The notes beneath the pieces were generated by a model, which was given only the letters and a program-made list of their open reading frames with translations, did no database searches and was not told where the DNA came from. Of a stretch of DNA of 64,000 nucleotides, positions 31,501 to 63,550 are shown in pieces (the stretch's first letter is position 1; each line of letters opens with the position of its first letter). Origin of the DNA: Macrostomum lignano. Its lineage: Eukaryota. A program made the translations under genes and the position numbers. The stretch covers positions 117,950 through 181,949 of the forward strand of contig NIVC01002344.1 of the NCBI GenBank assembly GCA_002269645.1. Direction: 5' to 3'.

Positions 31501-32738
31501 ATAGCAGCAGTGAAGCTGAGGATGGTGCTGTATTGGAGGAGCCATTGGGGCTCGAGGCCGACGGAGGCAACGGCATTTTCGTGAAGACGAGTGCAAGCCG
31601 CGACCGCGCACTGGAAACGGAGATTCGCTTCTAGACCGGGACTTGAAAGACGAGAGATGAGGAACTTGACGATTTCAGAGTGACCACAGATTGCAGCCTT
31701 TTCGGCAGCTTTGATGCAGGTGTCCCTGTTTGATTGCTCATTGATTTGTGGGACGAGAAACTTGACGATTTTAAAGTGACCATTGATTGCAGCAGATATG
31801 GCAGCTTTGATGCAGCAGGTGTCCCTGTTTGATTGGTCATTGATTTGTGGGACGAGAAACTTGACGATTTTAAAGTGACCATTGATTGCAGCAGATATGG
31901 CAGCTTTGATGCAGCAGGTGTCCCTGTTTGATTGGTCATTGATTTGTGGGACGAGAAACTTGACGATTTTAAAGTGACCATTGATTGCAGCAGATATGGC
32001 AGCTTTGATGCAGCAGGTGTCCCTGTTTGATTGGTCATTGATTTGTGGGACGAGAAACTTGACGATTTCAAAGTGACCATTGTCTGCAGCATTTTCGGCA
32101 GCTTTGATGCAGCAGATGTCCCTGTTTGATTGGTCATTGATTTGTGGGACGAGAAACTTGACGACTTCAAAGTGACCACGGATTGCAGCAGATTCGGCAG
32201 CTTTGATGCAGCAGGTGTCCCTGTTGGATTGGTCATTGATTTGTGGGACGAGAAACTTGACGACTTCAAAGTGACCACTGATTGCAGCATTTTCGGCAGC
32301 TCTGATGCAGCAGGTGTCCCTGTTTGATTGGTCAATTATGTGTGGGACCAGAAACTTGACGATTTCAAAGTGACCATATTCTGCAGAATTTTCGGCAGCT
32401 TTGATGCAGCAGATGTCCCTGTTTGATTGGTCAATTATGTGTGGGACCAGAAACATGACGATTTCAAAGTCACCAATTAATGCAGCAGTTTCGGCAGCTT
32501 TGATGCAGCAGGTGTCCCTGTTTGATTGGTCATTGATTTGTGAGAGGAGAAAATTAGCGATTTCAAAGTGACCATTGATTGCAGCCTTTTCGGCAGCTTT
32601 GATGCAGCAGATGTCCCTGTTTGATTGGTCATTGATCTGTGGGACGAGAAACTGGACGATTTCAAAGTGACCACGAATTGCAGCAGCAAAAATGTGTTCC
32701 GTGGTCGGTCGCTGATGTCGGCTTTGACTTTGACCCAT
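28595..32738 (-). CDS. Ankyrin-repeat cGAS-like receptor (cGLR / Mab-21 nucleotidyltransferase). 4 exons: 32738-31057, 30976-30935, 30835-30456, 30081-28595; 3591 nt = 1196 aa
   Basis: All three introns are GT-AG (80, 99, 374 nt) and phase-compatible. Begins MGQSQS, then 11 x 33-aa ankyrin units and about 4 canonical ankyrins. NTase motif TGSYAEG...DSDID, third acid in AQDTCHAIDC. Mab-21 motifs ELRVSFSFQEK, LKTYHAKTLLF, PHFFMP. Helical C-terminal domain. Confidence 0.88.
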
Positions 32739-46060: not shown

Positions 46061-46129
46061 CTACATGATTAAAGTACATGAAATCAACTTGCTGACTGAT
46101 TGAGCTCATTCTGAGAGCAGGTTCTTAGA

Positions 46130-46521: not shown

Positions 46522-47248
46522 TCAGTCTGACTCAGCCTTCATTTTCCGACCTCCACTTTGCGACTCGACTTTGAGGACTCCAGCTGCTGCATCAAGTCTC
46601 TCCAGCTTCTGCCTGACCCAGCCGATCTTCTCCTCGTCCTGCGTCTCCATGGCGACGCGTCTCTCTTTCTCGATCATCTCCATCTGCTGCAGGCTGAGCT
46701 CCACGTGCTCGCGGCAGTCGCTGTAGTGAGCCAGAGTGAGCAGCTCCTCCAAGTCCGGGTCTCCAAGCAGCTGTTCAATCCAATGATCGAATGCGATTGC
46801 AGGTGCGCGATTGCGGAGCAGCTCAGCTTGGAGACTCCAGCTCAGGCAGCGGAAGTTTACGTACAGGTGGGAGGAGAGAGGCTGCGACAGTCTGGCTGTG
46901 AACAGAGTCTGCGTGAACTCGGGAAGGAATGGGAAGCGAGGCGGAGAGTCGCAGGGGAGGCAGAACCTCCACGCCCAGTCTGAGTCTTCTGGCAGTTTTG
47001 TAATGTAGCTCTCTTTTCGAATATCATTTGGCTTCAACCCTGACTCAACCTGATGTCTCTGCAGCTCCATCGCGAGTCTATCAGCCTCCTCAGATTCTCC
47101 GAACTTCAAATGCGCCATGGCGGTCATGCACAGGGCGGCGCACTTGCACCACTGCAGCTCATGCAGGAGACTGAGCTGCCTCATCAGGGTGTCTCTGTCT
47201 CTCGATTCCGACTGCAGCTCGCTCACACACTGGTGCACCACACTGTAC
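46522..47248 (-). pseudogene. 3' part of a second cGLR paralog, truncated by the Polinton terminus
   Basis: YSVVHQCVSELQSES...KVESQS aligns with the C-terminal ~240 aa of the 28595 gene. Homology stops at cacactgtac (47248), where agtag begins. Confidence 0.9.
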
Positions 47249-47721
47249 AGTAGAAGGCATGAGGGGGCTTCTGGGACAAAATTTTTCACGTCCTCCATAA
47301 TCCACCTAAATCCATCCATATTATCCCTGACAGAATCAGAAAAAAAGGGGGGTCGCACTCGCTCCGAAAACGTCCTCCATAATCCCATTAAATCCATCCA
47401 TATTATCCCCGACAGAATCAGAAAAAAAGGGGGGTCGCACTCGCTCACAAAACGTCCTCCATAATCCCATTAAATCCATCCATATTATCCCTGACAGAAT
47501 CAGAGCATAACAGGTGTCCTACTGTTATGCTCTGAGGGTTTATGCTCTGAGCATAACAGCTCCAAATCCACCCATAACATTTCTAAAACAATCAGAAAAT
47601 AATCTGCATTCTTCTCCCCATGGGGCCCACATTCGATTCGCAACGTGCTACCACATCCCTAAGACTTTAAATCATCAGCGCAGGGTCCTCACCCTTTAAA
47701 AAAATTAAATTCTCAATAAAA

Positions 47722-47961
47722 ATGTTTCCAGTTGTCTCTCCAGGTTCCTATTATACTCAGCCTCATCCATTGTACAAATCCAAGTACCGATGCAAACTTG
47801 AATGCAGCGAGTACATGAGAAAATATTGGCCCGATGTTGATATCAATGTCCCTAATATTAATCTAGCTCTCCAAAGACACTGGTTTCATAAGTATGGAGT
47901 AACCTATGTAAAAGATTACGACAGCTACTATAACTTTGCAGAAATCATTAGACAATTGTAA
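47722..47961 (+). CDS. Polinton terminal small ORF (79 aa), left copy
   Basis: 76/79 aa identical to 63311-63550, preceded by aataaaa-ATG. Confidence 0.7.
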   Translation: MFPVVSPGSYYTQPHPLYKSKYRCKLECSEYMRKYWPDVDINVPNINLALQRHWFHKYGVTYVKDYDSYYNFAEIIRQL

Positions 47962-47968
47962 TTTTTTC

Positions 47969-48503
47969 TTACATTCTTTCAATGATCAACGTCAATACAA
48001 ACTCTTCCCCATTAAAATCAACGCCCATCCCATCTTCAGTCTCAAACTGTAGCACAATCTCGTGAATCTCTTTATTACTCAATACAACTCTTTTCACTGG
48101 ATTTGGTTTCTCTACCACCATCTGTCCTCCAGCAACAGAGTTGGAGATGTTGTACAAAATATTCGTTCGCTTTCCCTTAAATACCCAATCAAGACTGAGA
48201 TTGCTTCTGATTAGAATATTCAAACCCTTTACAATGTCTGCAATATTGGGTGCTAAGAACAAACCGCTTACACTTTCCCGGACCATTCTAACAGTCCCCG
48301 ATGCTTGAGTGGCGGTCTGCGCCGCGGATTCTGCCTTATAAACTTTCTTCTCGAATCCTAGTTCCCTATACCAAGTGTCATCTTTAAACTCAACCTCCGC
48401 ATTTTTGTGAACTTGCATGACCACTCTCATTACAGTGAGATCATAGGTTAGTTTGACAGGGAACAGTTTCTTCTCTGGCTTACTCGCATCAGGTGTCTCG
48501 AAA
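47969..48503 (-). pseudogene. 5'-truncated minor capsid (penton) gene copy
   Basis: Matches the C-terminal ~175 aa of 62438-63306 and is open across the site where that copy is frameshifted. Confidence 0.85.
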
Positions 48504-48687
48504 TATAAGCCGAAACATTAAATTCTGCATTATCTAATAATAAATCAGCACATGGACAAACTCATCTAAATTAAATATCAGCAAAGCTGGTTTGAAGATT
48601 GTGTCTGTCACTTTTTATTTAGAAGAATGAGTAAATAGCATATCATAATTAATGAATTGATAATTGATTACCAATGGGCAGATGTGC

Positions 48688-48952
48688 AACCGACAGCTCA
48701 GCCGCAGCTATTGCGCAGCTCATCTGAAGGCTGCTACGGCTGTTCAGTCCAAGGACTGGGGGGGGGGTCGCCATACACACACCCTCACTTACTCCAGCTA
48801 ATGCTGGTACCCATTTTACAGCTGGGTGAACTGAAGAAATGCGGAGTAAAGTTCCTTGCTCAAGGACACAAATTGTTGCAGTGGGATCGGGAATCGAACC
48901 CCCCGACCTTCAAGTCGTGAGTCCGACGCCCTAACCACTAGGCTACAACCCC
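48688..48952 (-). mobile_element. tRNA-derived CORE-like SINE (copy 2)
   Basis: Head GGGGTTGTAGCCTAGTGGTTAGGGCG...GGTTCGATTCCC, then gtccttgagcaagg...cagttcacccagctgtaaaatgggtacc. Confidence 0.82.
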
Positions 48953-49177
48953 TACAGCAGGTGGGGTTGTAGTATATCATAAATAACATGTTACACACAG
49001 CTGGTACCAGAATAGGAAAAATTTCAACGCGTTAGCCTTTTCTGGCCAATCGAACGCAAGCTAGAGCGTGCGTAAAATACAAAAATATTTATATATAAAA
49101 TATACAAAATAAACAAAATATACAAAAATATACAAAATATACAGAATATACAAAAATATTTAACAAAAAAAATAATT

Positions 49178-49420
49178 GCTCTTGCAATAGGAAAAAATGC
49201 CAACGCGTTGGCTTTTTCTGACCAATCCGAAGCAGGCTAGCGCTTTCTATAAAAAATTCTTTCTTTTGCTCTTGCAATAGGAAAAAATGCCAACGCGTTG
49301 GTTTTTTCTGACCAATCCGAAGCAGGCTAGCGCTTTCTATAAAAAATTCTTTCTTTTGCTCTTGCAATAGGAAAAAATGCCAACGCGTTGGTTTTTTCTG
49401 ACCAATCCGAAGCAGGCTAG
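49178..49420. repeat. 90-bp tandem repeat (about 2.7 units, plus a diverged unit at ~49010-49070) with palindrome and CCAAT
   Basis: Each unit has gccaacgcgttgg(c/t) followed by gaccaat. Confidence 0.88.
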
Positions 49421-49430
49421 AGTGTCTTTT

Positions 49431-50114
49431 TCAAACAAGTTGCTTCCATGACTGATCATCCTCAAGGATTTCAACTAATATTGACATATTAGCATTCAGA
49501 TCACGAAGCGGCAGGGAGACTTGCTTAAGACCAGGGTATTCACTTTCCAGCTTGAATAACTTCATATAAAGATTGGCCGACGAAACCTTGAGGTTTACTT
49601 TATCGAGAAGATAGTCAAAATTCTGTTTTCGGGCCTTTCTATCGTAGTTTTTGTTACCGGTTTTAAATGTCAACAAAATTTTTCCACATTAGATCGCATG
49701 AAGCAGACCACTCTTCTGCGACCTTTTCAGACGAAGCAGAGCGCACTGCAGACGCTTTACCACATCACCGCCTTCATCATCGGAAGGTATCCCAACATCC
49801 GCTTGGGGAATTCGTGAGGCGGTGAGCTTCTGTTTGAAGTCTTCTTTGCGCTTAGCTCGCCGCTCTGCATTAAGCGCCGCCATGCGATCACTCGCCTCCT
49901 TCTTCTGCTGCCGCGTTAGAGTTAGCACTTCCATTTGCAGCGAATCTTCCTTGAGCCCGAAAAAGCTGGCGATCTTTTGTCTTTTCTCCGCAGCTCTAAC
50001 TGGATCCTTGATTTCTGCTAAAGTCTCAGATAAGACCTCGCATAGTCTCCGTTTCGCTGTTTCGCCAGACAGGTTTAAACACCAATCGACATCCATAGAT
50101 GAACTAGAAGCCAT
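49431..50114 (-). pseudogene. Polinton ORF of unknown function (~227 codons) with one in-frame TAA
   Basis: ORFs 49689-50114 and 49431-49676 share a frame: ...LLHAI*CGKILLTFKTGNK... Confidence 0.55.
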
Positions 50115-50502
50115 TACGGTTTCGGTCGAGCAGCAGAAGCGTAAAGTAGTTGCACATAAAAAACTATAATCTGTCGCTTCTGTTTCTCAGTGCACAATGC
50201 GTGTGAAGATATAGAGAGCTAAAAATCGTTTTCAAATGTACATGCGCTCGTATCTACGCGAAATTTCTGTTACTAGCTGTTGCGTTCGATCGATTAAGCC
50301 ACCCACCCGCTGCTCTACACAAGCACCTAACACCAGCAAAGCGAGCTAAGACTCCCAAGCTCACTCTTTCCTTTCCTAAGATTGTATGGACAAAATTCCT
50401 AGCAATACATTCGCAAAAATCGATTTCTCAATTTTTAAAAATGCAGCTGCTGCGTTTGGCCAGGGCTGAGAATAATACGCTCGTAGTTAAACCCTTCCCG
50501 AC

Positions 50503-51003
50503 TCAAACGTCTCTCTCTACCCCCAGCTCTTTCAGCAGTCTTCCTAGTACCTTGTGAGGTGCGCACAAAATAAACCCGGCTCCCGTGCGTTCGCCCTCTC
50601 TCCCCGTGCACTCGCCCTCTCTCCCCAAACACCCGCCCTCGGCGCCCATTCCTAATCCCAGTTTTGCCTTACTAAAAATAACAGCTTTAACTAGCTTCCG
50701 AGCGATCGACTCACGAAATCCGCTTGAAGCCCCTATATTGTCGAGTCTCCTGAGCATTTCTTTGTCCCAGCGATTCTTCTCCTCAGGAAAATCCCTATAT
50801 TTAACATCGTGCCACATGCAGACAGAGTCTAGCTCGTTCACAGGCTCGTGCCCAGGATTTGGATTATTGTTTTTATCCAACTGAATTTCAAGTGGATTCA
50901 AAGGTCCGCAATATTTGTACCCGGGAACTGTCCAGCCTTTGTTTGGATGAGGAAGCTTTTCTATCAGTCCATGTGAATCTATTTTACCACCAGAGCGCTG
51001 CAT
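50503..51003 (-). CDS. Parvovirus-VP1u-type phospholipase A2 protein (166 aa)
   Basis: ATG at 51003. Ca-binding loop region PGYKYCGPLN and catalytic VNELDSVCMWHDVKY (HDxxY). Confidence 0.85.
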   Translation of the reverse strand: MQRSGGKIDSHGLIEKLPHPNKGWTVPGYKYCGPLNPLEIQLDKNNNPNPGHEPVNELDSVCMWHDVKYRDFPEEKNRWDKEMLRRLDNIGASSGFRESIARKLVKAVIFSKAKLGLGMGAEGGCLGREGECTGREGERTGAGFILCAPHKVLGRLLKELGVERDV

Positions 51004-51033
51004 TATTTTATTTAAAATTTTCTTTTTAAATAA

Positions 51034-52071
51034 ATGACAGATCAGAAACTTAAAAAACTCTACTACAGCGACAAAGGATTCTTTGTAGGCAAAAATGCCG
51101 TTAGTAAACTCATGGAGCTGAGTAAGGAACCAAAAGCTACAGTAGAAAAATGGCTCTCTAAGCAGGCTGTCTTTCAAGTCTATTTCCCACCAGTAAAATT
51201 TGAAAGACCTCACTTTAACATCTATAAACCTAACGAGGCGCACCAAGCAGATCTTTTGTTTCTCCCCAACGACTCAGGCTACAAGTATGCTCTTACAATT
51301 ACAGACGTTGCCTCCAGATATAAGGAAGCGAGACCGCTTAAGACGAAAAAGTCAGAGGTTGTTGCCAGCGCACTTCAAGAGATCTATGAAACCTCTCCTC
51401 TAACCTATCCAGAAATCTTTATGACCGACCCGGGTAAGGAATTCATGGGTGCAGTGAAATCCCTTATGGAAAAGCACAATACAGAGATTCGCTACGGAAG
51501 AACAAACTTGCACAGGGATCAAGCGTACGTTGAGAGATTCAATCTAACTCTAGCCAAGAGGCTATTCACTAAGCAGACAGCTGAAGAGCTGAAACTAAAA
51601 AGTGGTCAGTACTATACCAAGTGGACAGAAAGACTCCCCACTGTTATAGAGCAACTGAACAATGAAGTCACACGCATGACTGGATTGAAACCATCCCATG
51701 CAATTAAACAAGACACTGTCGAACTTAAGGCATCTCATAGAACAGACAACAACACGACAACCCCACACAACACGCACAACACAAAACACACCTCGAACTA
51801 CCCTAAGCTTCCAGGAGTTGAATCACCATACATACTGACAAACTCTGAGTTTCTACGCTTTTTATATCTACCTGGAGAGCTAGAGAAAGACACCAAAAGA
51901 AGAGCTACAGATCCATACTTCAGCCTTGATGTGCATAAAATAGACAGACATTTTACCTCCGACTCCGGTGACTATTACTTTTTATCTCAAGCCTTTAACC
52001 CTAAATCCCCCACGCGGTCATTCACTAGAGCTGAACTCCTAGTGATACCAGCTGACACAGAAATTAATTAA
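51034..52071 (+). CDS. INT: Retroviral-like DDE integrase (345 aa)
   Basis: HQADLLF, ITDVASRY, FMTDPGKEF, ERFNLTL. Intact frame. Confidence 0.95.
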   Translation: MTDQKLKKLYYSDKGFFVGKNAVSKLMELSKEPKATVEKWLSKQAVFQVYFPPVKFERPHFNIYKPNEAHQADLLFLPNDSGYKYALTITDVASRYKEARPLKTKKSEVVASALQEIYETSPLTYPEIFMTDPGKEFMGAVKSLMEKHNTEIRYGRTNLHRDQAYVERFNLTLAKRLFTKQTAEELKLKSGQYYTKWTERLPTVIEQLNNEVTRMTGLKPSHAIKQDTVELKASHRTDNNTTTPHNTHNTKHTSNYPKLPGVESPYILTNSEFLRFLYLPGELEKDTKRRATDPYFSLDVHKIDRHFTSDSGDYYFLSQAFNPKSPTRSFTRAELLVIPADTEIN

Positions 52072-52087
52072 AATATTAAAATAAAAA

Positions 52088-52534
52088 ATGACAAAGATTG
52101 AAACCAGAACCATCAATAAACTCAATAAAATCATTGAATCAAAGAAACCAGGTCTTATATCAATTAAAGGTGTCAAAGTAAAAATCGATCCCACGCAGCA
52201 AATACTTCAGTGTAATGAGCAAAGACACAGCATCACAGATGAAAAGTCAGGAGGAATCCTACCATTAGCAGCTCTTATTCCGATCATTGCAGGCGCTGTA
52301 AGTGCCGCAGGTGGTGTAGCTGGAGGTGTAGCAACTGCTGTTAAAGCTGGTAATGATAGAGCCCACCAGCTTGAATTGCAAAAGATTGCAAGAGACAAAG
52401 GTATAACAATTAAGGCAGGAGAGGGCTGCCCCGATCGTGATGATTGTGAGCATGAAAATTCTGTAAGCAAGTCTGACATTGTCAAAGCTATCATGACACT
52501 GCACAATGCTGGGTTTACAATAATGCGTATGTGA
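52088..52534 (+). CDS. Adenovirus pX/mu-precursor-like hydrophobic virion protein (148 aa)
   Basis: KSGG-ILPLAALIPIIAGAVSAAGGVA resembles the mastadenovirus pX C-terminal segment GG-ILPLLIPLIAAAIGAVPGIA. Confidence 0.65.
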   Translation: MTKIETRTINKLNKIIESKKPGLISIKGVKVKIDPTQQILQCNEQRHSITDEKSGGILPLAALIPIIAGAVSAAGGVAGGVATAVKAGNDRAHQLELQKIARDKGITIKAGEGCPDRDDCEHENSVSKSDIVKAIMTLHNAGFTIMRM

Positions 52535-52659
52535 TGAGGTTTAAAACCCCACTTTATCCAGCTTCATAAACCTAGCGCTACTTATAGGATGTAGAAACAG
52601 TTCAACTTTTCTATCAGGGTGGTAACCCTCAAATTTTTTTTTATATTTTAGAGAAAAAA

Positions 52660-55600
52660 ATGCCAAAAGCCAATCCAGCAAGAGATTTAGTCAACAAATA
52701 TTTTTCAAAAGGCGTCTCATTTCAAGACAAAAGTAATTCACTAAGAGAAGCATGTAAACAAAAGTTTAACACCGACCCTGGTCACCTGGGAAGCTATGAA
52801 AAACAGTTGGAAATCATCAATCAATTAGAATCAACCAGTATGCGCCTATAAAAAATTCTGCAAAGGAACACCAAGAGAGGAGTCGCAACTTAGTTAACAA
52901 ATACGAAACTCTCACTGGTGAAAAAGCAAAGTACCCACAAAATAAGCAGGAACAAGAGAAATTAGAGCAATTAATCCATTTAAAAGAGTCGGAGCTTGCC
53001 ACTGAAGAGATTAATTTTGCACAGAAAGTTTACAGAACATTACATAGAGTACACAATCCCAATTAACGGCACCAACGGTACCACCGCAAACATCTACGAC
53101 TATAAAGACAGCATCCAATCAGTTGTTGATCACACACTCAAAACACGCAAGACTTTAAACTACAGATATCATTCAAGATTGCGTTTTATATGCCTGCGAA
53201 ACCCACTGAGCATCTCGAGTATTACATGACAACAAAGGCAAAGCCATTCACCCCTACAGACACACTGGATCCTTTCCTTCAAGATGTCACTAAGAAAATT
53301 GAAGCGTTTACATCCAGAGGTTCCGGATGGGTCGTGGGAGGGATTCAAAGAGCGACTGTCATGGTCATGAAATATGACCCACTTAAAGCCTCCTCTTATA
53401 TAGAGCTCCCACATAAGCTAGCCGGCAAAAAAGCTTGCATAAATGTTAAAAATAAAGACAATTGCTGTGCTCTATGGGCAGTTCTTTCTGCACTTTTTGT
53501 GTCCCTCACCACCCCGAAAGAACCTCAAATTATCAAAATTATTTCAACTACTATCTCATCGAATGCGAAAAGAAGGGAATCAGGTTTGACAAAGGAGGCT
53601 TGGCGATCTCTCAGATCCCAAAGCTAGAAGAAGTGTTTAATAACAAAATTAGAATCACAGTCTTTGAGTGGAGTGAAAAACTGAGAAAGTTCAACCGGTC
53701 AGATGTAGCAAAGACGTTTTAGATCCTGAGGGGAAAAGGCGGACTGAAGTGGATCTTCTAGTGATTGGTAATTTACTAGAGGAGGCTCACTATGTTTGGA
53801 TTAAAGATCTTTCAAGACTCATTCACAAGCAGTTGAATAATCATCACGAGGCTGTTGCCATCTGCCGCTTGTGCCTTAAGCATTACAGTGGACCTGAACG
53901 CTTTGAAAAACTAGCAGAGCATGAATTATCATGCGAGGATCACCCAACAAACTGCTCTCTTCCTTCAGCTGAAGAGAAGTATCTCCGTTTAAGAACTATC
54001 ACAAGATGGAGAAGCTCCCATTTGTTGTATATGCTGATTTCGAATGCTCAATCGTGCCGGAAACTCAAAAACAAACTCAAACTCAAAAACATGTCCCCAA
54101 TTCAGTAGCATATGCCTTTATTAATACAAAAGGACTTGTTGAGTATAATTATTTCTTTGGAGAGCAGTGTGTGGAGCAGTTTATTGCCAGAATGTTAGAG
54201 TTGCAAAAAGTGATTAGCACCCTTCAACCTGTTCCAATAATGATGTCTGAGGAGGATGAAAGCAATTTCCTATCAGCAACTCATTGCCACATCTGCAGGA
54301 AACATTTAACTTGCACTAATATTAAAAACCCCACCGTTAGGGACCACTGCCACTTTACTGGGAAATTTAGAGGTGCAGCGCATAACACCTGTAATCTAAA
54401 GCTAAAATCGAACATTCATGATCTAACGATATTTTGTCACAACGCAAAGAACTATGACATGCATTTAATAGTTGAAAAAATCGGCATGATTCCAGACATA
54501 CACCTTGATTGCATCGCAGAGAACAAGGAGAAGTTTAAGTGTGTTGATATTAAACAGGATAATTTAGGTAAAGGTAAAATAAGACTGAAGGATTCATATC
54601 AATTTCTAGCTGCCAGTCTAGACGAACTAAGCAAGAATCTAAAAGATGAACAATGTACATATACAAAGATGTTTGCAAGTAAAATTAACAACAGTGATGA
54701 ATCATTTAAACTTTTAAGAAAGAAAGGCTTCTACCCCTATGAAAATATTACTGGGTATCACGTATTTGAAGAAGGTTTACCACCACAGGAGAAGTTCTTT
54801 TCAAAGCTAACAGACTCTGGAATCTCTGACAAAGACTATGAGCACGCGAAGCATGTCTATAATTACTTTAATTGTCAAAACTTCTTCCAGTATCACCTGC
54901 TTTACCTCTTCACAGATGTGTTTCTGCTGGCCGATGTGTTTGAAACCTTCAGATACACCTGGTACACAGCATATGGCCTCGATCCAGCACATTATGTGTC
55001 TCTGCCTGCCACTAGCTGGGAATCTTTGCTTAAAATGAAATGGGATCAAGATCCAGATTGGTACATTGAACTTCTTACAGACATTGACATGTACAATTTT
55101 GTCGAATCGTCAAAGCGAGGGGGGATCTCAATTTGTGTTAACAGGTATGCAAAAGCAAACAATCCCTACATTGAATCTTACAATAAGGAGCAGCCCTCAA
55201 ACTACATTACTTACTTGGACGCTAATAATCTCTACGGGTGGGCGATGAGTCAAGATCTTCCAGTTAGAGATTTTCGATGGCTACCCTCATCAGAATTCAA
55301 AGGACTTTTCATTGGCTGCCATTTATGAGGTTGATGTTTACATTCCACCAGAGCTTCACGACTATTTCTCTGACTTTCCACCCTTCCCAGAGAACATCAA
55401 GTGCCCGAAAATAATCGAAACTCCCAATGATAATAATGGAACTTGGCACCTGTCAGGAACAGAAAAAGAACATACAGAGAAACTAACACAGAATCTAAAC
55501 AACAAGACACGTTACAAAATCCATTACAAACTGCTTCAGTATTTTATCTCACTTGGTTGCAGGGTCACCAAAGTTCACCGGGCTCTTACATTTACAGAGG

Positions 55601-56489
55601 AAGCGTGGATGAAACCCTACATTGATAAGAACACCCAGTTTAGGACCAAAGCAACCAACGACTTTGACAAGAACCTCTTTAAGTTGGCCAACAACTCTGT
55701 CTATGGCAAGACTCTTGAGAATGAGCGGAAAAGAACAAACCTGAAACTTGTTACCTCATCAGAGCCTGCTGTTATTCAGGCAAATATGTCAAAGCCAACG
55801 TTCAAAGAACTCCATATCTTTAATAGCTACTTAGGTGTGATCATATTTTACAAAACCAAGGTGACGCTGCGCAAGCCGATCTATACAGGTGTCACTGTTC
55901 TCGACGAATCAAAACGTTTGATGTACCAGTTCTTCTATGGCATGAAGCAGCAGTACAAGGATAAAATGAAACTCTTGTACACTGACACAGACAGTTTTAT
56001 TATGGACATTCAAACAGAGGACATTTATCAGGACATGCTGCAGCAAAAAGATTTGTTTGACTTGTCTGAGTATGATGAATTTTGTAGGACACAGAATGGC
56101 GATCAAATGTTTGACGCCACTAACAAGAAAGTGATTGGGAAAATGAAGGACGAGATTGTGGTGACATAATCACTGAATTCATTGGGTTGAGAGCAAAGTC
56201 CTATTTTATAAAATGTGAGTCGTCAGACCCAATTAAAAAATCAAAGGGAATTCCGAAACGTGTGGTTAGGAAGGAAATTAATGAAGCTGAATACAGAGAC
56301 GCCTTGAATTGCAACAAAAAGACATCACATGAGTTCTCAAAGCTACAATCTAAAAACCATATTATTCACACAATTCAGCAAAAGAAGATTGGACTGTCAG
56401 GTGCAGATAACAAGAGATTCATTTTTGATGACAATATCAACAGTCTACCGTTCGGGCATTGGAGATTAGGTTTAGGAGGTTGGGTTTAG
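52660..56489 (+). pseudogene. POLB: Protein-primed family B DNA polymerase with N-terminal TP/vOTU-like region; at least 6 frameshifts
   Basis: GSGW, INVKNKDNCC, HYVWIKDLSRL, ExoI YADFE, EndoVII-like CHIC..VRDHCHFTGKFRGAAHNTCN, ExoII HNAKNYD, ExoIII DVFLLADVF, RGG, YLDANNLYGWAM, KLANNSVYGK, YTDTDS. The 52660-52995 N-terminal assignment is tentative. Confidence 0.93.
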
Positions 56490-56542
56490 GAGGTGGAGGT
56501 TGGGTTTAGGTTTAAGAGAAAGTTTAATAAACCTCATAAAAA

Positions 56543-56944
56543 ATGACAACAAATAACTTTCTTGAAGATTTGGCTAACGAACTGGAAATCCCAAACTTTA
56601 GAGGAATATTTATGAGGGACACTCTGCCTGATTTTCCTCTAAGAAAAGAATGCGGCATCATGAACTTTGACAGCACCGATAAGCCAGGATCTCATTGGGT
56701 TTGCTGGGTGATTGATCCCGATCGCAAGCACAAGTGTTATTACTTCGATAGCTATGGGACGGCAGTACCAGAAGAGCTAAGAAATTATATGAAGGGAAAA
56801 AATAATAAAAAAATTTATCGCTCAGACTTTATTCTCCAAGGTCTTAGCAGTGATATTTGCGGTGAGCTGTGCATGACTGTTTTGTATGCAATGACCAAAA
56901 CACGAAAGACCTACAAGGAAATTATTCGTACCTGTGTTTCATAA
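56543..56944 (+). CDS. PRO: Adenain/Ulp1-like cysteine maturation protease (133 aa)
   Basis: GSHWVC (His), YYFDSYG (Asp), LQGLSSDICGELC (Gln, Cys). Confidence 0.93.
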   Translation: MTTNNFLEDLANELEIPNFRGIFMRDTLPDFPLRKECGIMNFDSTDKPGSHWVCWVIDPDRKHKCYYFDSYGTAVPEELRNYMKGKNNKKIYRSDFILQGLSSDICGELCMTVLYAMTKTRKTYKEIIRTCVS

Positions 56945-56948
56945 GGGT

Positions 56949-57661
56949 TCATTGTGCATTCCTCGTTGTACTTCTCGTTGTCCTTCTTTCCACATAGTGT
57001 TGAAGAACTTTCTCGAGTTCATTTCTCTGCTGACTCATGTCATCAGTACCGACCATGTTCAAGTTCATTCGAATTGATTGTTCATAAAGATCCTGAATGG
57101 TTTTGAACTCATCCTCTGAAATGAACTTATCCTCGATTGCCCTTGAAATGTACCCTATGATTGAAGTGTGCACCCCTTTCTCTTTTACTTGCTTCTCCTG
57201 TAGCTGCTTTAGTTTTTTTCGCCTGTTTCGCGCTAATGCTCCAGTAATTGCTGAAATAAGTCCACATGCAGCACCCACAGAGCCGAGCGGGATTGCGATT
57301 GGGGCTGTGATGACTGGCAACACTGAGACAGCTGCAGCAGATCCAGATAGAACAGACACAGATCCTAGAATCATATTGCTGTAGTCGAAAAATTTACAGT
57401 GGTTGTCATAGCGCTTAATTTTCTTTGTGTTGTGGAAAATATTTTTTTCAAGATCATCGCGCATTTTTTGAATCTCCACTAGTCGAAACTGTTGAGAGTT
57501 ACAAGTAATGACGGGGTAGAGTTTTTGTTGCTCATATTGGGTGCATTCAGATTCGGTGCCAGGTTTTGTGTGTTCGAATTCGGTGCCATTGAGTTTGGTG
57601 CTGTCGGTATTTTAGGTTCAACGTATTGAGACTGATCGTATAGAGAATTTTGTTGGGCCAT
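56949..57661 (-). CDS. Hairpin-membrane protein with PTAP and LYPVI motifs (one 1-nt frameshift near 57524)
   Basis: ATG at 57661 (MAQQNSLYDQ...KIPTAPNS). Adding one A to the A5 run joins ...SNKKLYPVITCNSQQFRLVEIQKMRDDLEK, a ~48-aa hydrophobic stretch and basic RNRRKKLK. Confidence 0.7.
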
Positions 57662-57698
57662 TTTTTTCCCTAGAAAAAAAAATAAAAAAATTAAAAAA

Positions 57699-58358
57699 CT
57701 ACCCAGTTGAAAGATCTGTTTTCTTTTTGATAATTTCATCTGCAGAAATGACCGGACGAGCAGCAGATTCTGCTTCATCAATAGCAATATCACGAAGATT
57801 GAGTGTTCTCTCCAGACGATTAAGCCTCCTTAGTATTTTACCCCAAGAGCTATACATTCCGTTTAGATAGCTACTGTGTGATACATCCTTTCTCTTTAAT
57901 GCTTCAAGTCTTTCTTTGATTCGATCATGCAACGATGTTGACTGAGTCATGAACTCTTCTAAATTATTTACTTTAGCTGTGTTTGTGAAAACTCCTCCTT
58001 CGAGAATACGCATCCGTCTATCAGTGGAATTTCCCAGAAGATTAACTGATGATCTCAAGCCGTTGATTAGCGAGACTATCGAAGTTATTTCTGACCTTAG
58101 TTCATTAGTTGCGTTTAACAACGGCACATAAAGCTTATCACTTTCAAACTTCTGCCTAGCTACTTTAAGCCTGAGATCTTCCATGTTTATTTGCAACTGG
58201 TGCATGGAGCGCTCTAGGGCTTTCAGTCTGTTTTTATTCAGTTTGATCTCTGGGATCTTTTCGTCGCTGTTGATATATCGCCTGTCAAGGATGGATATCT
58301 GAGCTGATGTAAGAGCGCTGTTGCCAGAAATGGATTCACCTGCAAAGTTTATCGACAT
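57699..58358 (-). CDS. Polinton coiled-coil protein of unknown function (219 aa)
   Basis: Intact ORF with heptad-rich helices and an A-rich context before the ATG. Confidence 0.7.
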   Translation of the reverse strand: MSINFAGESISGNSALTSAQISILDRRYINSDEKIPEIKLNKNRLKALERSMHQLQINMEDLRLKVARQKFESDKLYVPLLNATNELRSEITSIVSLINGLRSSVNLLGNSTDRRMRILEGGVFTNTAKVNNLEEFMTQSTSLHDRIKERLEALKRKDVSHSSYLNGMYSSWGKILRRLNRLERTLNLRDIAIDEAESAARPVISADEIIKKKTDLSTG

Positions 58359-58374
58359 CTTTTAATAGCAAATT

Positions 58375-59175
58375 TTAAATTACAGTTCTTTTTTCTTTGC
58401 TGATAATCACAAACTGGTAAGGCTGATTCCACTTGTCATAGCAAAGATTAACGAATTCCTCTTGTGAAATCTTTCTGCTTGAGTTTTTTGTTGGATTTAT
58501 GAAATAGGCAGGCGCAATGACCTCATTGTAAAATCTTTTTAACCTGTCCTGTGGAATGGTTGGAAACAGGAGAATCAGATTGCAGTTCCCACGAATTGTT
58601 TTTTTCGGGAGCTCGAACCAATTCTGTGCAATGTAAATTACATTACAATTGTTATGTCGCCCTCTTGTAAAATAGTTTTCTATCTGCTTCTGTGGGCCTG
58701 TCATACAATCATCAAAGACGATCAAATGCTTTCTCCCCTTTTCTAGCTCATCTGGTTGGGGTAGAAGTTTGGTCTTTGGATCAGCCTGTGGATCTCCATA
58801 GGTGAACACTTTAATGTTCTGCCATTTTTCATTGTCTTTGAGGTGCTTTGCATATTCAGCAGCTACAATTTCTGGGTTACTGGGAAGGCTCATTTGGTTA
58901 TTAAAACATTGAATAATGTCCTCTTTGTTCAGTTTGTTTTGCAATCCAGAAATCAGCATTTTATACTCATCTTGATACAATGTGGGAGAGTAGATGTGCA
59001 GAGTGTCATAGTCGATAAAGCCAGGTCTAAGAAGCATGTTAAAGACTCTGAATGTTTTACCTGAACCTGATGAACCAACAACAATGCATCTGAAGTGACT
59101 CGGGATTGACTCATGATGAGAAAACTTAATCTGATTACGCGTCCAGTGAGGATTGAAGTCGCTTGAAAAGTCCAT
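58375..59175 (-). CDS. A32/FtsK-HerA-family genome packaging ATPase (266 aa)
   Basis: Walker A GSSGSGKT, Walker B LIVFDD, RGRHNN, IAQNWF, IRGNC. Confidence 0.95.
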   Translation of the reverse strand: MDFSSDFNPHWTRNQIKFSHHESIPSHFRCIVVGSSGSGKTFRVFNMLLRPGFIDYDTLHIYSPTLYQDEYKMLISGLQNKLNKEDIIQCFNNQMSLPSNPEIVAAEYAKHLKDNEKWQNIKVFTYGDPQADPKTKLLPQPDELEKGRKHLIVFDDCMTGPQKQIENYFTRGRHNNCNVIYIAQNWFELPKKTIRGNCNLILLFPTIPQDRLKRFYNEVIAPAYFINPTKNSSRKISQEEFVNLCYDKWNQPYQFVIISKEKRTVI

Positions 59176-59219
59176 TTTTTTCTATGATAAAATTTTTTTT
59201 AATAATAAATAATTTAGAA

Positions 59220-59427
59220 GATGTGTCATTTTGGGACTTAGATGTGTCATTTTGGGACTTAGATGTGTCATTTTGGGACTTAGATGTGTCATTTTGGGAC
59301 TTAGATGTGTCATTTTGGGACTTAGATGTGTCATTTTGGGACTTAGATGTGTCATTTTGGGACTTAGATGTGTCATTTTGGGACTTAGATGTGTCATTTT
59401 GGGACTTAGATGTGTCATTTTGGGACT
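59220..59427. repeat. 21-bp perfect VNTR inside the Polinton (gatgtgtcattttgggactta x ~10)
   Basis: Directly visible, upstream of the ATPase ATG. Confidence 0.95.
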
Positions 59428-59470
59428 AGTCTTGTACCTTTACATTTCTTGTACCCTCGGAAAGTACCCT

Positions 59471-59869
59471 TTAGTCAAATTTGAAACCACTTCCTTTTTT
59501 AATGCTAGCTCTCATCTTCTCATAGACTGCAGGGTCCACACTGTCTGGATTTGGGGCCAGCGAAGCCAGCGGAGCCAGCGGGGCCAGTGGAGGTTGAATC
59601 TCTTGTTTAGGTGTTACAGTATCCTTTATCTTTTTGGCTGCTGTGGCTACACTGCCACCCGCTTCGGCAACGTTCTTGATGTTCTCTTTGTTCTCTCCAA
59701 TGACCTTAAAAATCTTGGCCCCCTGAGCGATCAAATCGGCAAGGCCATTCCCAGAGCGTTCTTTTCTTGGATAGTGGCCTGCAGGGAATAGTCCAGATCC
59801 GCGTTTAATGAGATTAAGTTCCTCTTTGTCATAGTATTTGTCCACGTCTTTCTCAAAAATAAGTGGCAT
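59471..59869 (-). CDS. Small virion-type protein with GxG motifs and an amphipathic helix (132 aa)
   Basis: ATG at 59869. RGSG, SGNG-LADLIAQGAKIFKVIG, C-terminal KGSGFKFD. Confidence 0.7.
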   Translation of the reverse strand: MPLIFEKDVDKYYDKEELNLIKRGSGLFPAGHYPRKERSGNGLADLIAQGAKIFKVIGENKENIKNVAEAGGSVATAAKKIKDTVTPKQEIQPPLAPLAPLASLAPNPDSVDPAVYEKMRASIKKGSGFKFD

Positions 59870-59885
59870 TTTTACTTGAAATAAA

Positions 59886-61100
59886 TTATTTTTTGTTGAA
59901 CCGCGAAAGCAGAAGCTCTCTCGCCCGTTTGTCAATATACTTCTTTTCCATCATTTTGTCCAGGATGTTGACAAATTCTTTTCTATTTTCATCTTTCATT
60001 CCGGTCTTTGCCGCTCCTAGAAGAACCGCTACTCGCTTGTAGAATTCAGGCATGCCTTTTCCGGAAGAGCTTGGAGGTGATTCGAATGATTGGTCAGAGG
60101 AGGAACTGTCATGTGGCGCTTGTCTTTGTTGAGGTGTGAATACTCTGTCATTGATTCGCTTCATTCGTTCTGGGGAGAGCCGCTCTAATTGTCGCCAAGT
60201 ATCAGGGTTTGTATCTTTGTACTGGGAAATCTCATTTGGCCCTGCTTTTTCAAGCGCTTCTAGTACTTGTTCGGGTGTGATTTGTTGCTGTGGCGGTGGA
60301 GGTTGTTGTGGTTGTGGTTGTGTTTGTGGTTGCTGCTGTTGTGGTTGTTGTAGTTGTTGTTTTGGTTGCTGCTGTTGTGGTTGCTGCTGTTGTGGCTGTG
60401 GTTGTTGTGGTTGTTGTCTTATGACCTCTTCTTGATCCGGCAAACCAAACCATTGTTTAAAGTATTTGTATTTTCTAAACCTGTTCAAGTCAATCCTGTT
60501 TTCATGTAAAACTTTCAAAACACCGTTGTTCTTGAGAATGTCGATGTCCCTCTCTAAAGCGAAGGTAACCAGATCTCTATAATTCTTTAATTGCTTCTCG
60601 GATATTTTTTCCTGATTTTTAGTCATGTAGTCGAGTAAACTTTGAGTGAAGGGGATTCGTTTAGTTTCTGCGCCTTTATTGATTGAAATAGTTTCCTTCG
60701 TCACTTCAATGTTGTAATCCGCCGGTTCCCCGGTGATATTTTTTCGCCAGGCGCTAATTCCAAATATATATTTTCCATCATCCGTTACGGGGCCAAAAAA
60801 GTTATCTGTCACTTTCATCTGCACTGGTTGTCCTGGTTGCTGAGCCTGTGGTTGTCCCGGTGAAGATGGAATTTTACCCAATGTGTTTTGCAACTGGCTC
60901 TCTTGAATATCATCAATTGTTTCCTTCACAGTGTCGATGTTTTTCTTCGCTTCTGTGTATCCAGGTTTGTGAAATTCGGTGGCTGCTTGGACGAATTCAT
61001 TGTAAGATTGTTGTTCTTTGTTGATTAGTCCGGTAACTCGTTTCTCTGCTTGCGCCAGCTTTTCTAGTTCAGAGATATGATATGAACTTTTCCGCTTCAT
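59886..61100 (-). CDS. Polinton protein (404 aa) with a Q/P-rich tract and a C-terminal helical motif (possibly PZ-like)
   Basis: Intact ORF ending SGKG-MPEFYKRVAVLLGAAKTG...EFVNILDKMMEKKYID. The PZ assignment is inference. Confidence 0.7.
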   Translation of the reverse strand: MKRKSSYHISELEKLAQAEKRVTGLINKEQQSYNEFVQAATEFHKPGYTEAKKNIDTVKETIDDIQESQLQNTLGKIPSSPGQPQAQQPGQPVQMKVTDNFFGPVTDDGKYIFGISAWRKNITGEPADYNIEVTKETISINKGAETKRIPFTQSLLDYMTKNQEKISEKQLKNYRDLVTFALERDIDILKNNGVLKVLHENRIDLNRFRKYKYFKQWFGLPDQEEVIRQQPQQPQPQQQQPQQQQPKQQLQQPQQQQPQTQPQPQQPPPPQQQITPEQVLEALEKAGPNEISQYKDTNPDTWRQLERLSPERMKRINDRVFTPQQRQAPHDSSSSDQSFESPPSSSGKGMPEFYKRVAVLLGAAKTGMKDENRKEFVNILDKMMEKKYIDKRARELLLSRFNKK

Positions 61101-61130
61101 TTCTTATTTTATTTTATTTTTAGTTAAAAA

Positions 61131-62417
61131 ATGAACGACCCACTGACACCAGTTTTCTACAAAATTAACAAGCCTATTTTGAGTGATGATAGCACAATCA
61201 AAGCGACACAAGTTAGAGTTCCGAGTCACGAGAACCAGAATGAAACTAATTTGGGTCCAGGTCAAACACTGACATTTACATACAATGGATGTTCGTCTCT
61301 GGTTAGTGTGCACAGTCTTAAGAGCGGCTTCCATATGACATTTCAATTCAAGACAAAAGGTGGTGCGGATGCGGCTCGTGCTAACGTTGACAAGCATGAT
61401 GCGGATGTGGCTCTGATCAGTAACTTTTGGGCGTACATGTTCAAGGAGTTTAGTGTATCGAATGGGAGCACCGAGTTGGAGCGAATCGCCAACTTTGGAA
61501 TTGTCTATGACGCTCATTGTTTGATCGAGAATCCTGATTTTATTCAGTTGGGAAGTGGTGCGGGTTTTATTGCAGATGAAAAAGAAGGAGACATCAATGA
61601 CAGTGGCTATAAAAAGAGGAAGAAGAGATACAACTATGCATTGCAAGGTGCTGATGATGCTGCTAAGAACCCACAGTATCGGTCTGTTGATGTATTTGTA
61701 CCATTGAGATTCATGAGTGGATTCTGTAATACATTTAATCGACTGACTAGTAACTTTAGCTACACCTTTAAGATGACTAGAGATGATCGCAGTAGAGTGT
61801 TGTGGACTGGGGCGGACCACACAAGGATGGAGGTGAAGCTAACCGGAATCGAGCTGTATTTGGAAGTCATTGAGCCAAAGACTGCACTAAAAGCAGACTA
61901 TCTCAAGGCAATAGAGAAGGACATTGATGTTGCATACACAGCCTACATGTGTCGAGATGAGCGAAACGAAACTAGAACAAACATCTGCATTAAAGAGGGA
62001 TCATGCAGCAATCCAAGGTATATCATTATTAATATGAGAAACCCAAATAGCATCATACGCTACATGCATGGAGACGTGCGGTCCATTCAGCATGAAATCA
62101 GTGATAATCTTTACCCTGCACTGCCACAAAATGGAGATTTCAGTCAGAACAAGATTAGCAAATTTTACAGCGAGTTGGTCGACTTGGCTGTGAAAGAGAA
62201 CAATGGAATTGCTATCACTGCTCTTCAATATGGAACTCTATATCCGATGTTTGGCGCTGATGTGTCTGCCAGACAAATGCCTACTGATAACAGCCCTGTG
62301 AATATCGTGAATAACATTGAAAGGACTACCGCAACACCCGTGGACCTGTACATTATCTATGCATTTGAGAGGAAGGTGAAGCTTAACATGATCAACAATT
62401 CATCCAGTAAAGTTTAA
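61131..62417 (+). CDS. MCP: Double jelly-roll major capsid protein (428 aa)
   Basis: Intact, beta-rich, of typical size and position. N-terminal DDSTIK...P, VFVPLRFMSGFC, YPALPQNGDF, FGADVS. Confidence 0.85.
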   Translation: MNDPLTPVFYKINKPILSDDSTIKATQVRVPSHENQNETNLGPGQTLTFTYNGCSSLVSVHSLKSGFHMTFQFKTKGGADAARANVDKHDADVALISNFWAYMFKEFSVSNGSTELERIANFGIVYDAHCLIENPDFIQLGSGAGFIADEKEGDINDSGYKKRKKRYNYALQGADDAAKNPQYRSVDVFVPLRFMSGFCNTFNRLTSNFSYTFKMTRDDRSRVLWTGADHTRMEVKLTGIELYLEVIEPKTALKADYLKAIEKDIDVAYTAYMCRDERNETRTNICIKEGSCSNPRYIIINMRNPNSIIRYMHGDVRSIQHEISDNLYPALPQNGDFSQNKISKFYSELVDLAVKENNGIAITALQYGTLYPMFGADVSARQMPTDNSPVNIVNNIERTTATPVDLYIIYAFERKVKLNMINNSSSKV

Positions 62418-62437
62418 ATATTTTTTTTGTGAAAAAA

Positions 62438-63306
62438 ATGGAAGCGATTGCTGAAAGACTAAATAATATTGTTTCTCACTCTAAGGAGAGCATTCCTATT
62501 ACAATAACTGGGCGAATTAATGACTCAAACGGGATATTTGTTGAAAAATTAGAGCAGGCGATTCGCCTGGATCCAGGTGCTAATTACCATGTCTATCTTA
62601 ACGACTTCACCGGTTGGTCAAACGTTCCTAATGTGATGGCAGCAAATAATAAGTTTTATTACAAATGGAAAGGTGCAGCAGCAGACCCTGTGGTATTCCA
62701 TGTGAGCACGCAAAGTGTGGATACCTACAATAACTTTCTAGAAAATGTCTTCACTAAGAGAGGCCATTTTGACTTTGAGACACCTGATTCGAGTAAGCCA
62801 GAGAAGAAACTGTTCCCTGTCAAACTAACCTATGATCTCACTGTAATGAGAGTGGTCATGCAAGTTCACAAAGATGCGGAGGTTGAGTTTAAAGATGACA
62901 CTTGGTATAGGGAACTGGGATTCGAGAAGAAAGTTTATAAGGCAGAATCCGCGGCGCGGACCGCCACTCAAGCATCGGGGACCGTTAAAATGGCCGGGAA
63001 AATGTAAGCGGTTTGTTCTTAGCACCCAATATTGCAGACATTGTAAAGGGTTTGAATATTCTAATCAGAAGCAATCTCAGTCTTGATTGGGTATTTAAGG
63101 GAAAGCGAACGAATATTTTGTACAACATCTCCAACTCTGTTGCTGGAGGACAGATGGTGGTAGAGAAACCAAATCCAGTGAAAAGAGTTGTATTGAGTAA
63201 TAAGGAGATTCACGAGATTGTGCTACAGTTTGAGACTGAAGATGGGATGGGCGTTGATTTTAATGGGGAAGAGTTTGTATTGACGTTGATCATTGAAAGA
63301 ATGTAA
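62438..63306 (+). CDS. mCP: Minor capsid (penton, single jelly-roll) protein, 1-nt deletion at ~62993
   Basis: Follows the MCP. NVMAANNKFYY, SNLSLDWVF, NGEEFVLTL. Reads atggccgg here against atggtccgg in the in-frame left copy. Confidence 0.82.
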
Positions 63307-63310
63307 GAAA

Positions 63311-63550
63311 TCACAATTGCCTAATGATTTCTGCAAAGTTATAGTAGCTATCGTAATCTTTTACATAGGTTACTCCATACTTATGAAACCAGTGTCTTTG
63401 GAGAGCTAGATTAATATTAGGGACATTGATATCAACGTTGGGCCAATATTTTCTCATGTATTCGCTGCATTCAAGTTTGCATTGGTACTTGGATTTGTAC
63501 AATGGATTAGGCTGAGTATAATAAGAACCTGGAGAGACAACTGGAAACAT
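63311..63550 (-). CDS. Polinton terminal small ORF (79 aa), right copy
   Basis: Conserved against the 47722 copy. Confidence 0.7.
   Translation of the reverse strand: MFPVVSPGSYYTQPNPLYKSKYQCKLECSEYMRKYWPNVDINVPNINLALQRHWFHKYGVTYVKDYDSYYNFAEIIRQL

What the first reader, a model, noticed from the sequence alone, without database searches (positions are those of the whole stretch)
47240..47300. Polinton terminus inserted exactly into a second cGLR gene: a virus-like element breaking a candidate antiviral sensor
Seen: the cGLR paralog matches copy 1 up to cacactgtac (47248). Copy 1 continues acgtctgcg, while here the sequence switches to AGTAGaaggc..., the outer edge of the Polinton terminal repeats. 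Established: Polintons begin with 5'-AG(T) and make ~6-bp TSDs. Inference: this is an integrase-mediated insertion with predicted TSD CTGTAC. It may be chance, or a case of an endogenous virus knocking out an immune sensor.
Basis: partly seen in the sequence, partly recalled or inferred. Interest (0 to 1): 0.72.

Follow-up and report, generated by a model that had tools for sequence, protein, structure and literature searches.

The report
Degraded Polinton inserted in cGLR paralog
A roughly 17-kb virus-like Polinton/Maverick element, itself old and degraded, starts exactly where a second copy of a flatworm (Macrostomum) ankyrin-cGAS-like receptor gene stops. This looks like an ordinary transposon insertion that split one member of a large gene family, and nothing shows that it targeted an immune sensor.

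Summary
Copy 2 of an ankyrin-cGLR gene (minus strand) matches copy 1 up to 47248/47249, then switches to AGTAGAAGG.

From 47249 to beyond 64000 lies a typical Polinton:
- rve integrase, protein-primed PolB, adenain-like protease, A32-type ATPase, double-jelly-roll capsid protein and penton;
- terminal inverted repeats (TIRs) of at least 1.25 kb.

The start AGTAG fits the published 5'-AGT end motif. Three uninterrupted homologs read straight through the site: copy 1 and two Macrostomum lignano genes. One of these, NIVC01002066.1, is 96.7% identical to copy 2, has a colinear 3' flank, and serves as an empty-site comparator.

The gene family meets the published cGLR criteria: cGAS/MAB21L1 fold, and the GS…DhDh…hDh motif in copy 1.

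Not verifiable: the right terminus lies at least 61 bp past the window. The predicted CTGTAC duplication and the 5' half of copy 2 were therefore not seen, and no public copy of this genome or element family could be reached.

The element is not recent or intact. Its TIR arms are 93% identical, PolB carries four frameshifts, the penton gene carries one, and a SINE-like repeat is nested inside.

Copy 2 is one of at least 20 paralogs. Neither of the two M. lignano loci examined has Polinton sequence nearby. The "virus breaks antiviral sensor" framing is unsupported speculation. Interest is low to moderate.

The parts
46522..47249 (-). Copy 2 remnant. It holds the last 241 codons plus the stop of an ankyrin-cGLR paralog (C-terminal helical domain only). 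The reading frame is open and the downstream flank is native.
   Evidence: 94.6% to copy 1. 96.7% to M. lignano L001. 91% amino-acid identity to the C-terminus of P0010. The downstream satellites are colinear with L001.
47243..47248 (.). CTGTAC, the predicted left copy of a 6-bp target-site duplication. This is a prediction only.
   Evidence: The hexamer sits directly before AGTAG and is present once in the intact homologs. The 6-bp rule comes from PMC8097293. The right copy was not seen.
47249..64000 (.). Polinton/Maverick element. It is at least 16.75 kb inside the window and continues at least 61 bp beyond 64000.
47249..48502 (+). Left terminal inverted repeat. It consists of a 39-bp unique terminus starting AGTAG, 2.6 copies of an 82-bp repeat (47288-47504), a 79-codon ORF, and a duplicate of the 3' part of the penton gene (47969-48430, minus strand).
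62774..64000 (-). Right terminal inverted repeat, cut by the window end. At least 3.7 copies of the 82-bp repeat are visible.
   Evidence: 93.0% identity to the left arm outside the tandem repeats.
48610..48965 (-). Nested interspersed repeat that looks like a tRNA-derived SINE, with A- and B-box-like motifs. It lies just inside the left TIR and is absent from the right arm.
   Evidence: Copies at window 1331-1627 and in M. lignano L002. ARAGORN calls no tRNA here.
50503..51246 (-). ORF with a phospholipase A2-like domain.
   Evidence: PF08398, E = 7e-13.
51034..52071 (+). rve-family integrase. The ORF is open.
   Evidence: PF00665, E = 4.6e-9.
52088..52534 (+). Small protein similar to adenovirus protein X/mu.
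   Evidence: PF05829, E = 4.5e-7.
53190..56489 (+). [quoted passage not shown] The gene is broken by 4 frameshifts. No stops fall within the homologous stretches.
   Evidence: PF03175. More than 6000 homologs, the best 44-46% identical. Five homologous segments in alternating frames.
56543..56944 (+). Adenain-like cysteine protease. The ORF is open.
   Evidence: PF00770.
58375..59175 (-). A32/FtsK-type packaging ATPase. The ORF is open.
   Evidence: PF04665.
61131..62417 (+). Double-jelly-roll major capsid protein, full length.
   Evidence: PF21738. Relatives of 422-438 aa align over 100% of it at 71-78% identity.
62429..63306 (+). Penton (minor capsid) gene, broken by 1 frameshift.
   Evidence: tblastn with the penton ORFs of L003 and L004 gives two segments in different frames.
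28595..32738 (-). Copy 1, an apparently intact ankyrin-cGLR gene. It has 33-residue repeats and ankyrin repeats, an NTase core, the Mab-21_C domain and a C-terminal helical domain, with at least one intron.

Best explanation
A Polinton/Maverick integrated, through its rve-type integrase, into the large last coding exon of a second ankyrin-cGLR paralog in a Macrostomum genome. The break falls at the codon boundary ...KFADVY|SVVHQ. This separates the ankyrin, NTase and Mab-21_C part from the last 241 codons. The first part is expected beyond the element's right end, outside the window.

The insertion is not recent. The element has since accumulated about 7% divergence between its TIR arms, five frameshifts in two genes, and a nested SINE-like repeat.

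Shown:
- the exact left junction;
- the identity of the element;
- the identity of the gene family;
- uninterrupted homologs at the same site.

Inferred:
- that 47249 is the true terminus;
- that a CTGTAC duplication and the 5' half of the gene flank the right end;
- that the gene was whole before the insertion.
For: - Junction.
- Polinton gene set: rve, DNA_pol_B_2, Peptidase_C5, Pox_A32 and DJR; PLA2-like and Adeno_PX-like ORFs.
- TIR of at least 1.25 kb.
- Size of at least 16.8 kb against a published mean of 16.9 kb, and a start of AGTAG against the published AGT end motif and 6-bp TSD (PMC8097293).
- Copy 2 sits in its native context. Its 3' flank (21-bp and 37-bp satellites, then the 45393-45707 segment) is colinear with the flank of the intact M. 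lignano gene in L001, to which it is 96.7% identical.
- No second copy of the 5' half of the gene and no other Polinton genes occur in window 1-47248.
Against: - The right terminus, the TSD and the 5' half of copy 2 were not seen.
- The outermost 39 bp have no inverted partner inside the window.
- TIR-arm divergence (JC 0.073) exceeds the copy 2-L001 divergence (3.3%, dS 0.033 from only 5 synonymous differences). This is awkward if L001 is a strict empty ortholog and the arms were identical at integration.
- The junction rests on one assembly.
Confidence: 0.7

Rival explanations
1. The Polinton integrated into, or next to, a copy that was already a truncated partial duplicate or pseudogene. 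No functional gene was broken.
For: Only the last 241 codons are visible. The region is full of satellites and segmental duplication. dN/dS of this domain is high across the family (0.6-1.1).
Against: A pre-existing truncation would have to end within one base of the element's AGTAG terminus. The remnant has no stop or frameshift in 241 codons, and only 2 codon changes are unique to it.
Confidence: 0.1
2. The element inserted elsewhere nearby. A later deletion or rearrangement, with one endpoint at the element's end, then removed the 5' part of copy 2.
For: The right flank is unknown. The two TIR arms differ in the number of 82-bp repeats (2.6 against at least 3.7), which shows that the ends have been remodelled.
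Against: It needs a breakpoint exactly at a canonical AGT terminus. No such mechanism is documented for Polintons, as far as I know.
Confidence: 0.1
3. The junction is an assembly chimera in a repeat-rich, recently duplicated genome, for example a collapse of haplotypes or homeologs.
For: M. lignano and its relatives are hidden polyploids that are hard to assemble (PMC10468722 and PMC5704211, abstracts). All five gene breaks in the element are frameshifts with no stop, a pattern also produced by long-read indel errors.
Against: A chimera would be unlikely to join the sequences at a canonical element terminus with single-base precision. The flank on the gene side is colinear with an independent assembly.
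Confidence: 0.07
4. The insertion is biologically directed. Either Polintons preferentially land in cGLR loci, or loss of this sensor was favoured because it detects such elements.
For: None beyond the co-occurrence itself.
Against: - This is one event in a family of at least 20 paralogs.
- Two M. lignano paralog loci have no Polinton genes within 10 kb.
- The element is degraded.
- The nearest relative of copy 2 has His at the presumed third catalytic position.
Confidence: 0.03

Closest known systems
Polinton/Maverick elements of animals (Kapitonov & Jurka 2006, as cited in PMC8097293; vertebrate Mavericks in PMC8097293)
   Same: - The same core genes: pPolB, rve integrase, adenain-like protease, A32-type ATPase, DJR major capsid protein and penton.
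- Long TIRs; the published range is 46-1447 bp.
- Size of about 17 kb.
- An AGT-type 5' end.
- Degraded, like 96% of the vertebrate loci.
   Different: - The host is a macrostomid flatworm. I found no paper that mentions Polintons in Macrostomum.
- The closest capsid relatives are only 71-78% identical and come from unannotated Logan, ENA and JGI contigs. PolB is at most 46% identical to anything found.
- The TIR contains 82-bp subterminal tandem repeats and a duplicated penton 3' end.
- The element carries PLA2-like and Adeno_PX-like ORFs.
Animal cGAS-like receptors as catalogued by Li et al. 2023 (PMC9980059)
   Same: - Copy 1 and its M. lignano relatives have the MTGS-X20-DIDW motif.
- Many also have a third acid 57-70 residues later.
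- The predicted fold is cGAS/MAB21L1/MB21D2-like.
- M. lignano proteins with the same type of motif were in that paper's screening set.
- Ankyrin-cGLR fusions are mentioned there.
   Different: - An additional C-terminal helical domain of about 240 residues has no family assignment. This is the only part that copy 2 retains.
- 7 of the 16 relatives that carry the GS..DhDh motif have H, Q or W at the presumed third catalytic position.
- No activity data exist for this clade.
Ordinary gene disruption by transposable-element insertion in expanded immune gene families
   Same: A single mobile-element insertion in a coding exon of one paralog, with intact sister copies nearby.
   Different: The inserted element is a large virus-like Polinton, not a small transposable element.

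Membership tests
Polinton/Maverick | [quoted passage not shown] | tested here: met
   PF03175, E = 5.9e-11. Thousands of Polinton-type PolB homologs. The gene is present but broken by 4 frameshifts.
Polinton/Maverick | Retrovirus-like (rve) integrase | tested here: met
   PF00665, E = 4.6e-9, above the gathering score.
Polinton/Maverick | Virion module: DJR major capsid protein, penton, A32-type ATPase and adenain-like protease | tested here: met
   PF21738 (below the gathering score, but relatives 71-78% identical carry the domain). PF04665 and PF00770. Penton identified by homology to the ORF following the capsid gene in L003 and L004.
Polinton/Maverick | Terminal inverted repeats | tested here: met
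   47288-48502 against 63941-62774; 93% identity outside the tandem repeats. The outermost part of the right arm lies outside the window.
Polinton/Maverick | 5'-AG / AGT terminal motif | tested here: met
   The left end reads AGTAGA, against the published (AGT)2 or (AG)3. The right end was not seen.
Polinton/Maverick | 6-bp target-site duplication | not testable with these tools
   The right junction is at least 61 bp beyond the window. The genome is not retrievable.
cGAS-like receptor (criteria of PMC9980059) | Active-site motif h[QT]GS-X8-20-[DE]h[DE]h-X50-90-h[DE]h | tested here: met
   Copy 1 reads MTGS-X20-DIDW-X66-IDC. The third acid is assigned by the pattern and a predicted strand, not by superposition. 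For copy 2 this part is not in the window. Its nearest relative, P0010, has His there.
cGAS-like receptor (criteria of PMC9980059) | Homology across both the NTase core and the C-terminal helix bundle | tested here: met
   Mab-21_C hit. A profile of the family hits only cGAS, cGLR1 and MAB21L1 in the PDB, through the helix bundle. Foldseek alignments of 360-405 columns to cGAS chains cover both lobes.
cGAS-like receptor (criteria of PMC9980059) | Predicted structural homology to cGLR/CD-NTase | tested here: met
   AF2 model of P0012: pLDDT 76, pTM 0.77. Top Foldseek hits are MAB21L1, cGAS, MB21D2 and CdnE, with probability 1.00 and target TM about 0.5.
cGAS-like receptor (criteria of PMC9980059) | Ligand-activated synthesis of a nucleotide second messenger; antiviral role | not testable with these tools
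   No biochemical or expression data are available here.

The most novel reading that the evidence does not exclude
Polinton integration is non-random with respect to the expanded ankyrin-cGLR clusters of Macrostomum, or inactivation of this particular sensor was selected because it recognises Polinton-type DNA. Either would give a natural example of an endogenous DNA virus disabling a cGLR.
Probability: 0.04. Interest if true: 0.65.

Novelty: new member of a known kind. Interest (0 to 1): 0.25.

Why it matters
As it stands, this is a cleanly delimited Polinton in a macrostomid flatworm, a host group for which I found no published Polinton description. It also documents a large ankyrin-cGLR family whose members vary at a presumed catalytic residue. 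It is useful for annotation and for dating Polinton activity in Macrostomum.

It would matter more only if a genome-wide survey showed that Polinton insertions are enriched at cGLR loci, or if filled and empty alleles segregate and correlate with expression of the family.

Tried and rejected
- **Reading past 64000.** Exact look-ups of the window's capsid, ATPase and integrase proteins found no contig.
- **Relatives with both termini.** The capsid homologs sit on contigs of 2-4 kb. PolB homologs are at most 46% identical. A 14.7-kb metagenome scaffold (L005) served only as a PolB comparator. IMG/VR and JGI metagenome scans for the capsid gene, the 20-21-nt terminus and a TIR 23-mer all found nothing.
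- **Element cargo.** The idea that the cGLR fragment is cargo inside a longer element was rejected. Its 3' flank is colinear with the chromosomal flank of an intact M. lignano gene.
- **Relaxed constraint on copy 2.** Detection by dN/dS was uninformative. There are too few differences, and the domain evolves at 0.6-1.1 in all pairs.
- **Sequence-only PDB search.** A search with a full-length family member was swamped by ankyrin repeats. It had to be repeated without them.
- **tRNA check.** ARAGORN finds no tRNA in the nested repeat.

Full report
**1. The observation**

At 47240-47300 the plus strand reads ...CACACTGTACAGTAGAAGGCATGAGGGGGCTTC.... A self-comparison shows that 46534-47249 matches 28620-29334 at 94.6% over 716 bp and that the match stops there. 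Copy 1 continues ...CTGTACACGTCTGCG. The only qualification is that A47249 is common to both sequences, so the breakpoint is ambiguous by one base.

**2. The interrupted gene**

Both copies lie on the minus strand.

- Copy 1 has a 483-codon last exon with a Mab-21_C domain.
- An upstream exon carries ...MTGSYAEGWANSLVQVNGRTAADSDIDWTV....
- Further upstream there are ankyrin repeats and a run of near-identical 33-residue repeats.
- All protein homologs are Macrostomum lignano ankyrin + Mab-21_C proteins, apart from one JGI metagenome protein. At least 20 were found, the best 85-87% identical. The window therefore comes from M. lignano or a close relative.

I tested the cGLR label against the three criteria of Li et al. 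(PMC9980059).

- *Active-site motif.* After removing one GT-AG intron from this host gene, copy 1 matches the motif as MTGS-X20-DIDW-X66-IDC.
- *Structure.* An AlphaFold2 model of the ankyrin-less relative P0012 (pLDDT 76, pTM 0.77) finds MAB21L1, cGAS, MB21D2 and bacterial CdnE as its best structural matches.
- *Sequence homology.* A profile of the Mab21 region hits only cGAS, cGLR1 and MAB21L1 in the PDB.

M. lignano proteins with the same kind of motif were in the screening set of that paper.

One caveat applies. The presumed third acid is D or E in 9 of the 16 relatives that carry the GS..DhDh motif, and H, Q or W in the other 7. P0010, the closest relative of copy 2, has H.

Copy 2 retains only the last 241 codons. 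This is a helical C-terminal domain with no family assignment.

**3. The inserted DNA**

From 47249 to the window end the ORFs encode the following:

- an rve integrase;
- a protein-primed PolB;
- an adenain-like protease;
- an A32-type ATPase;
- a double-jelly-roll capsid protein;
- a penton protein;
- a PLA2-like ORF and an Adeno_PX-like ORF.

The segment 47288-48502 is an inverted repeat of 63941-62774. The right arm runs off the window inside its 82-bp subterminal repeats. At least 3.7 copies are visible there, against 2.6 on the left. The right terminus is therefore at least 61 bp beyond 64000, and the element is at least 16.8 kb long.

Published vertebrate Mavericks average 16.9 kb, have TIRs of 46-1447 bp and 6-bp duplications, and most commonly end in AGT (PMC8097293). 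The start AGTAGA fits this.

That 47249 is the true outer edge is inferred from this motif and from the homology break. It is not shown by an inverted partner, because the outermost 39 bp have none inside the window.

**4. Evidence that this is an insertion into a resident gene**

Copy 1 and two M. lignano genes, in L001 and L002, read straight through the site as ...GCAGACGT GTACAG TG....

Copy 2 is closest to the gene in L001: 96.7% over 725 bp, against 93.1% to copy 1. Downstream of the stop codon, the 21-bp satellite, the 37-bp satellite and a further segment follow in the same order in both.

The fragment is therefore in its chromosomal context and is not cargo of the element. L001 serves as an empty-site comparator.

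No Polinton protein has a match in L001, L002 or the rest of the window.

**5. State and age of the element**

- Outside the tandem repeats, the TIR arms differ by 69 substitutions and 6 gap events in 990 aligned positions (93.0% identity, JC 0.073).
- PolB is split into five homologous segments in alternating frames. That means four frameshifts, with no stops in the aligned stretches.
- The penton gene has one frameshift relative to two comparators and relative to its own partial duplicate in the left arm.
- The capsid, integrase, protease and ATPase ORFs are open.
- A repeat of about 350 bp with tRNA-like A and B boxes lies just inside the left arm. It also occurs at 1331-1627 and in M. lignano.

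This is an old, non-autonomous copy.

Two cautions apply. First, a pattern of frameshifts without stops can also come from long-read consensus errors. Second, the TIR divergence is larger than the copy 2-L001 divergence. Either the arms were not identical at integration or L001 is not a strict ortholog.

**6. What could not be done**

The prediction that decides the matter is CTGTAC followed by the rest of the gene after the right terminus. It needs sequence past 64000.

- Exact look-ups of three element proteins found no contig.
- The nearest capsid relatives are 71-78% identical and sit on short contigs.
- Scans of IMG/VR and JGI metagenomes for the capsid gene, the terminus and a TIR segment were empty.

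**7. Verdict**

The most likely account (about 0.7) is a plain integrase-mediated Polinton insertion into the last exon of one ankyrin-cGLR paralog, some time ago.

The rivals are:

- insertion beside an already truncated copy;
- a terminus-adjacent deletion;
- a misassembly.

Each needs a coincidence with a canonical terminus, and each would be settled by the same descriptive data.

Nothing supports a directed or adaptive relation between the element and the sensor. There is one event among at least 20 paralogs, no Polinton near two other paralogs, a degraded element, and a nearest relative that lacks the third catalytic acid. The finding is real but ordinary.

Noticed in passing
window 30891-32738 (minus strand); L001 7133-9847: The N-terminal part of copy 1 is a run of about ten near-identical 33-residue (99-bp) repeats (GHFEIVKFLVPQINDQSNRDTCCIKAAE...). 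They precede the canonical ankyrin repeats. The same array lies upstream of the M. lignano gene in L001. They look like recently amplified degenerate ankyrin repeats.
   Followed up: partly
M. lignano proteins P0010-P0028 and window copy 1 (position ..HAI[x]CC..): The residue that fits the third catalytic acid of the cGLR motif is D or E in 9 relatives (and D in window copy 1) and H, Q or W in 7 others. The expanded family may therefore mix active and inactive enzymes.
   Followed up: partly
window 48610-48965, 1331-1627; L002 22950-23300: An interspersed repeat of about 300-350 bp has a tRNA-like end (A- and B-box-like motifs) and is shared with M. lignano at 75-79% identity. It is probably a SINE family. 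One copy is nested in the Polinton.
   Followed up: partly
window 8475-9313, 16744-17333, 17879-19387, 26031-26948, 32625-34743, 34902-35601, 38646-40358, 40840-42391, 42814-43412, 44000-46400: The host part of the window is dominated by long minisatellite arrays with periods of roughly 20-100 bp. They produce strong local GC skew and long spurious ORFs.
   Followed up: no
window 47249-64000 versus 1-47248: The element is about 40% G+C, while much of the flanking host DNA is 45-57%. Inside the element there are perfect or near-perfect tandem arrays: 21 bp x 10 at 59219-59427 (100% identical) and 90 bp x 2.7 at 49176-49420.
   Followed up: no
window 50503-51246 (minus strand) and 52088-52534 (plus strand): The Polinton carries a parvovirus-type phospholipase A2-like domain ORF (PF08398, E = 7e-13) and an adenovirus protein X/mu-like ORF (PF05829, E = 4.5e-7). 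In a distant metagenomic relative (L005), the PLA2-like domain is fused to the integrase.
   Followed up: no
window 53190-56489 and 62429-63306: All five breaks in the element's genes are frameshifts and none is a stop codon. The host ORFs nearby are open. This pattern is compatible with real decay, but also with uncorrected homopolymer errors in AT-rich sequence of a long-read assembly.
   Followed up: no
window 46522-47448 (minus strand): The open frame of the copy 2 remnant continues upstream for 67 codons into the Polinton's terminal repeats. A chimeric transcript or ORF starting inside the element is formally possible. No evidence of expression is available.
   Followed up: no
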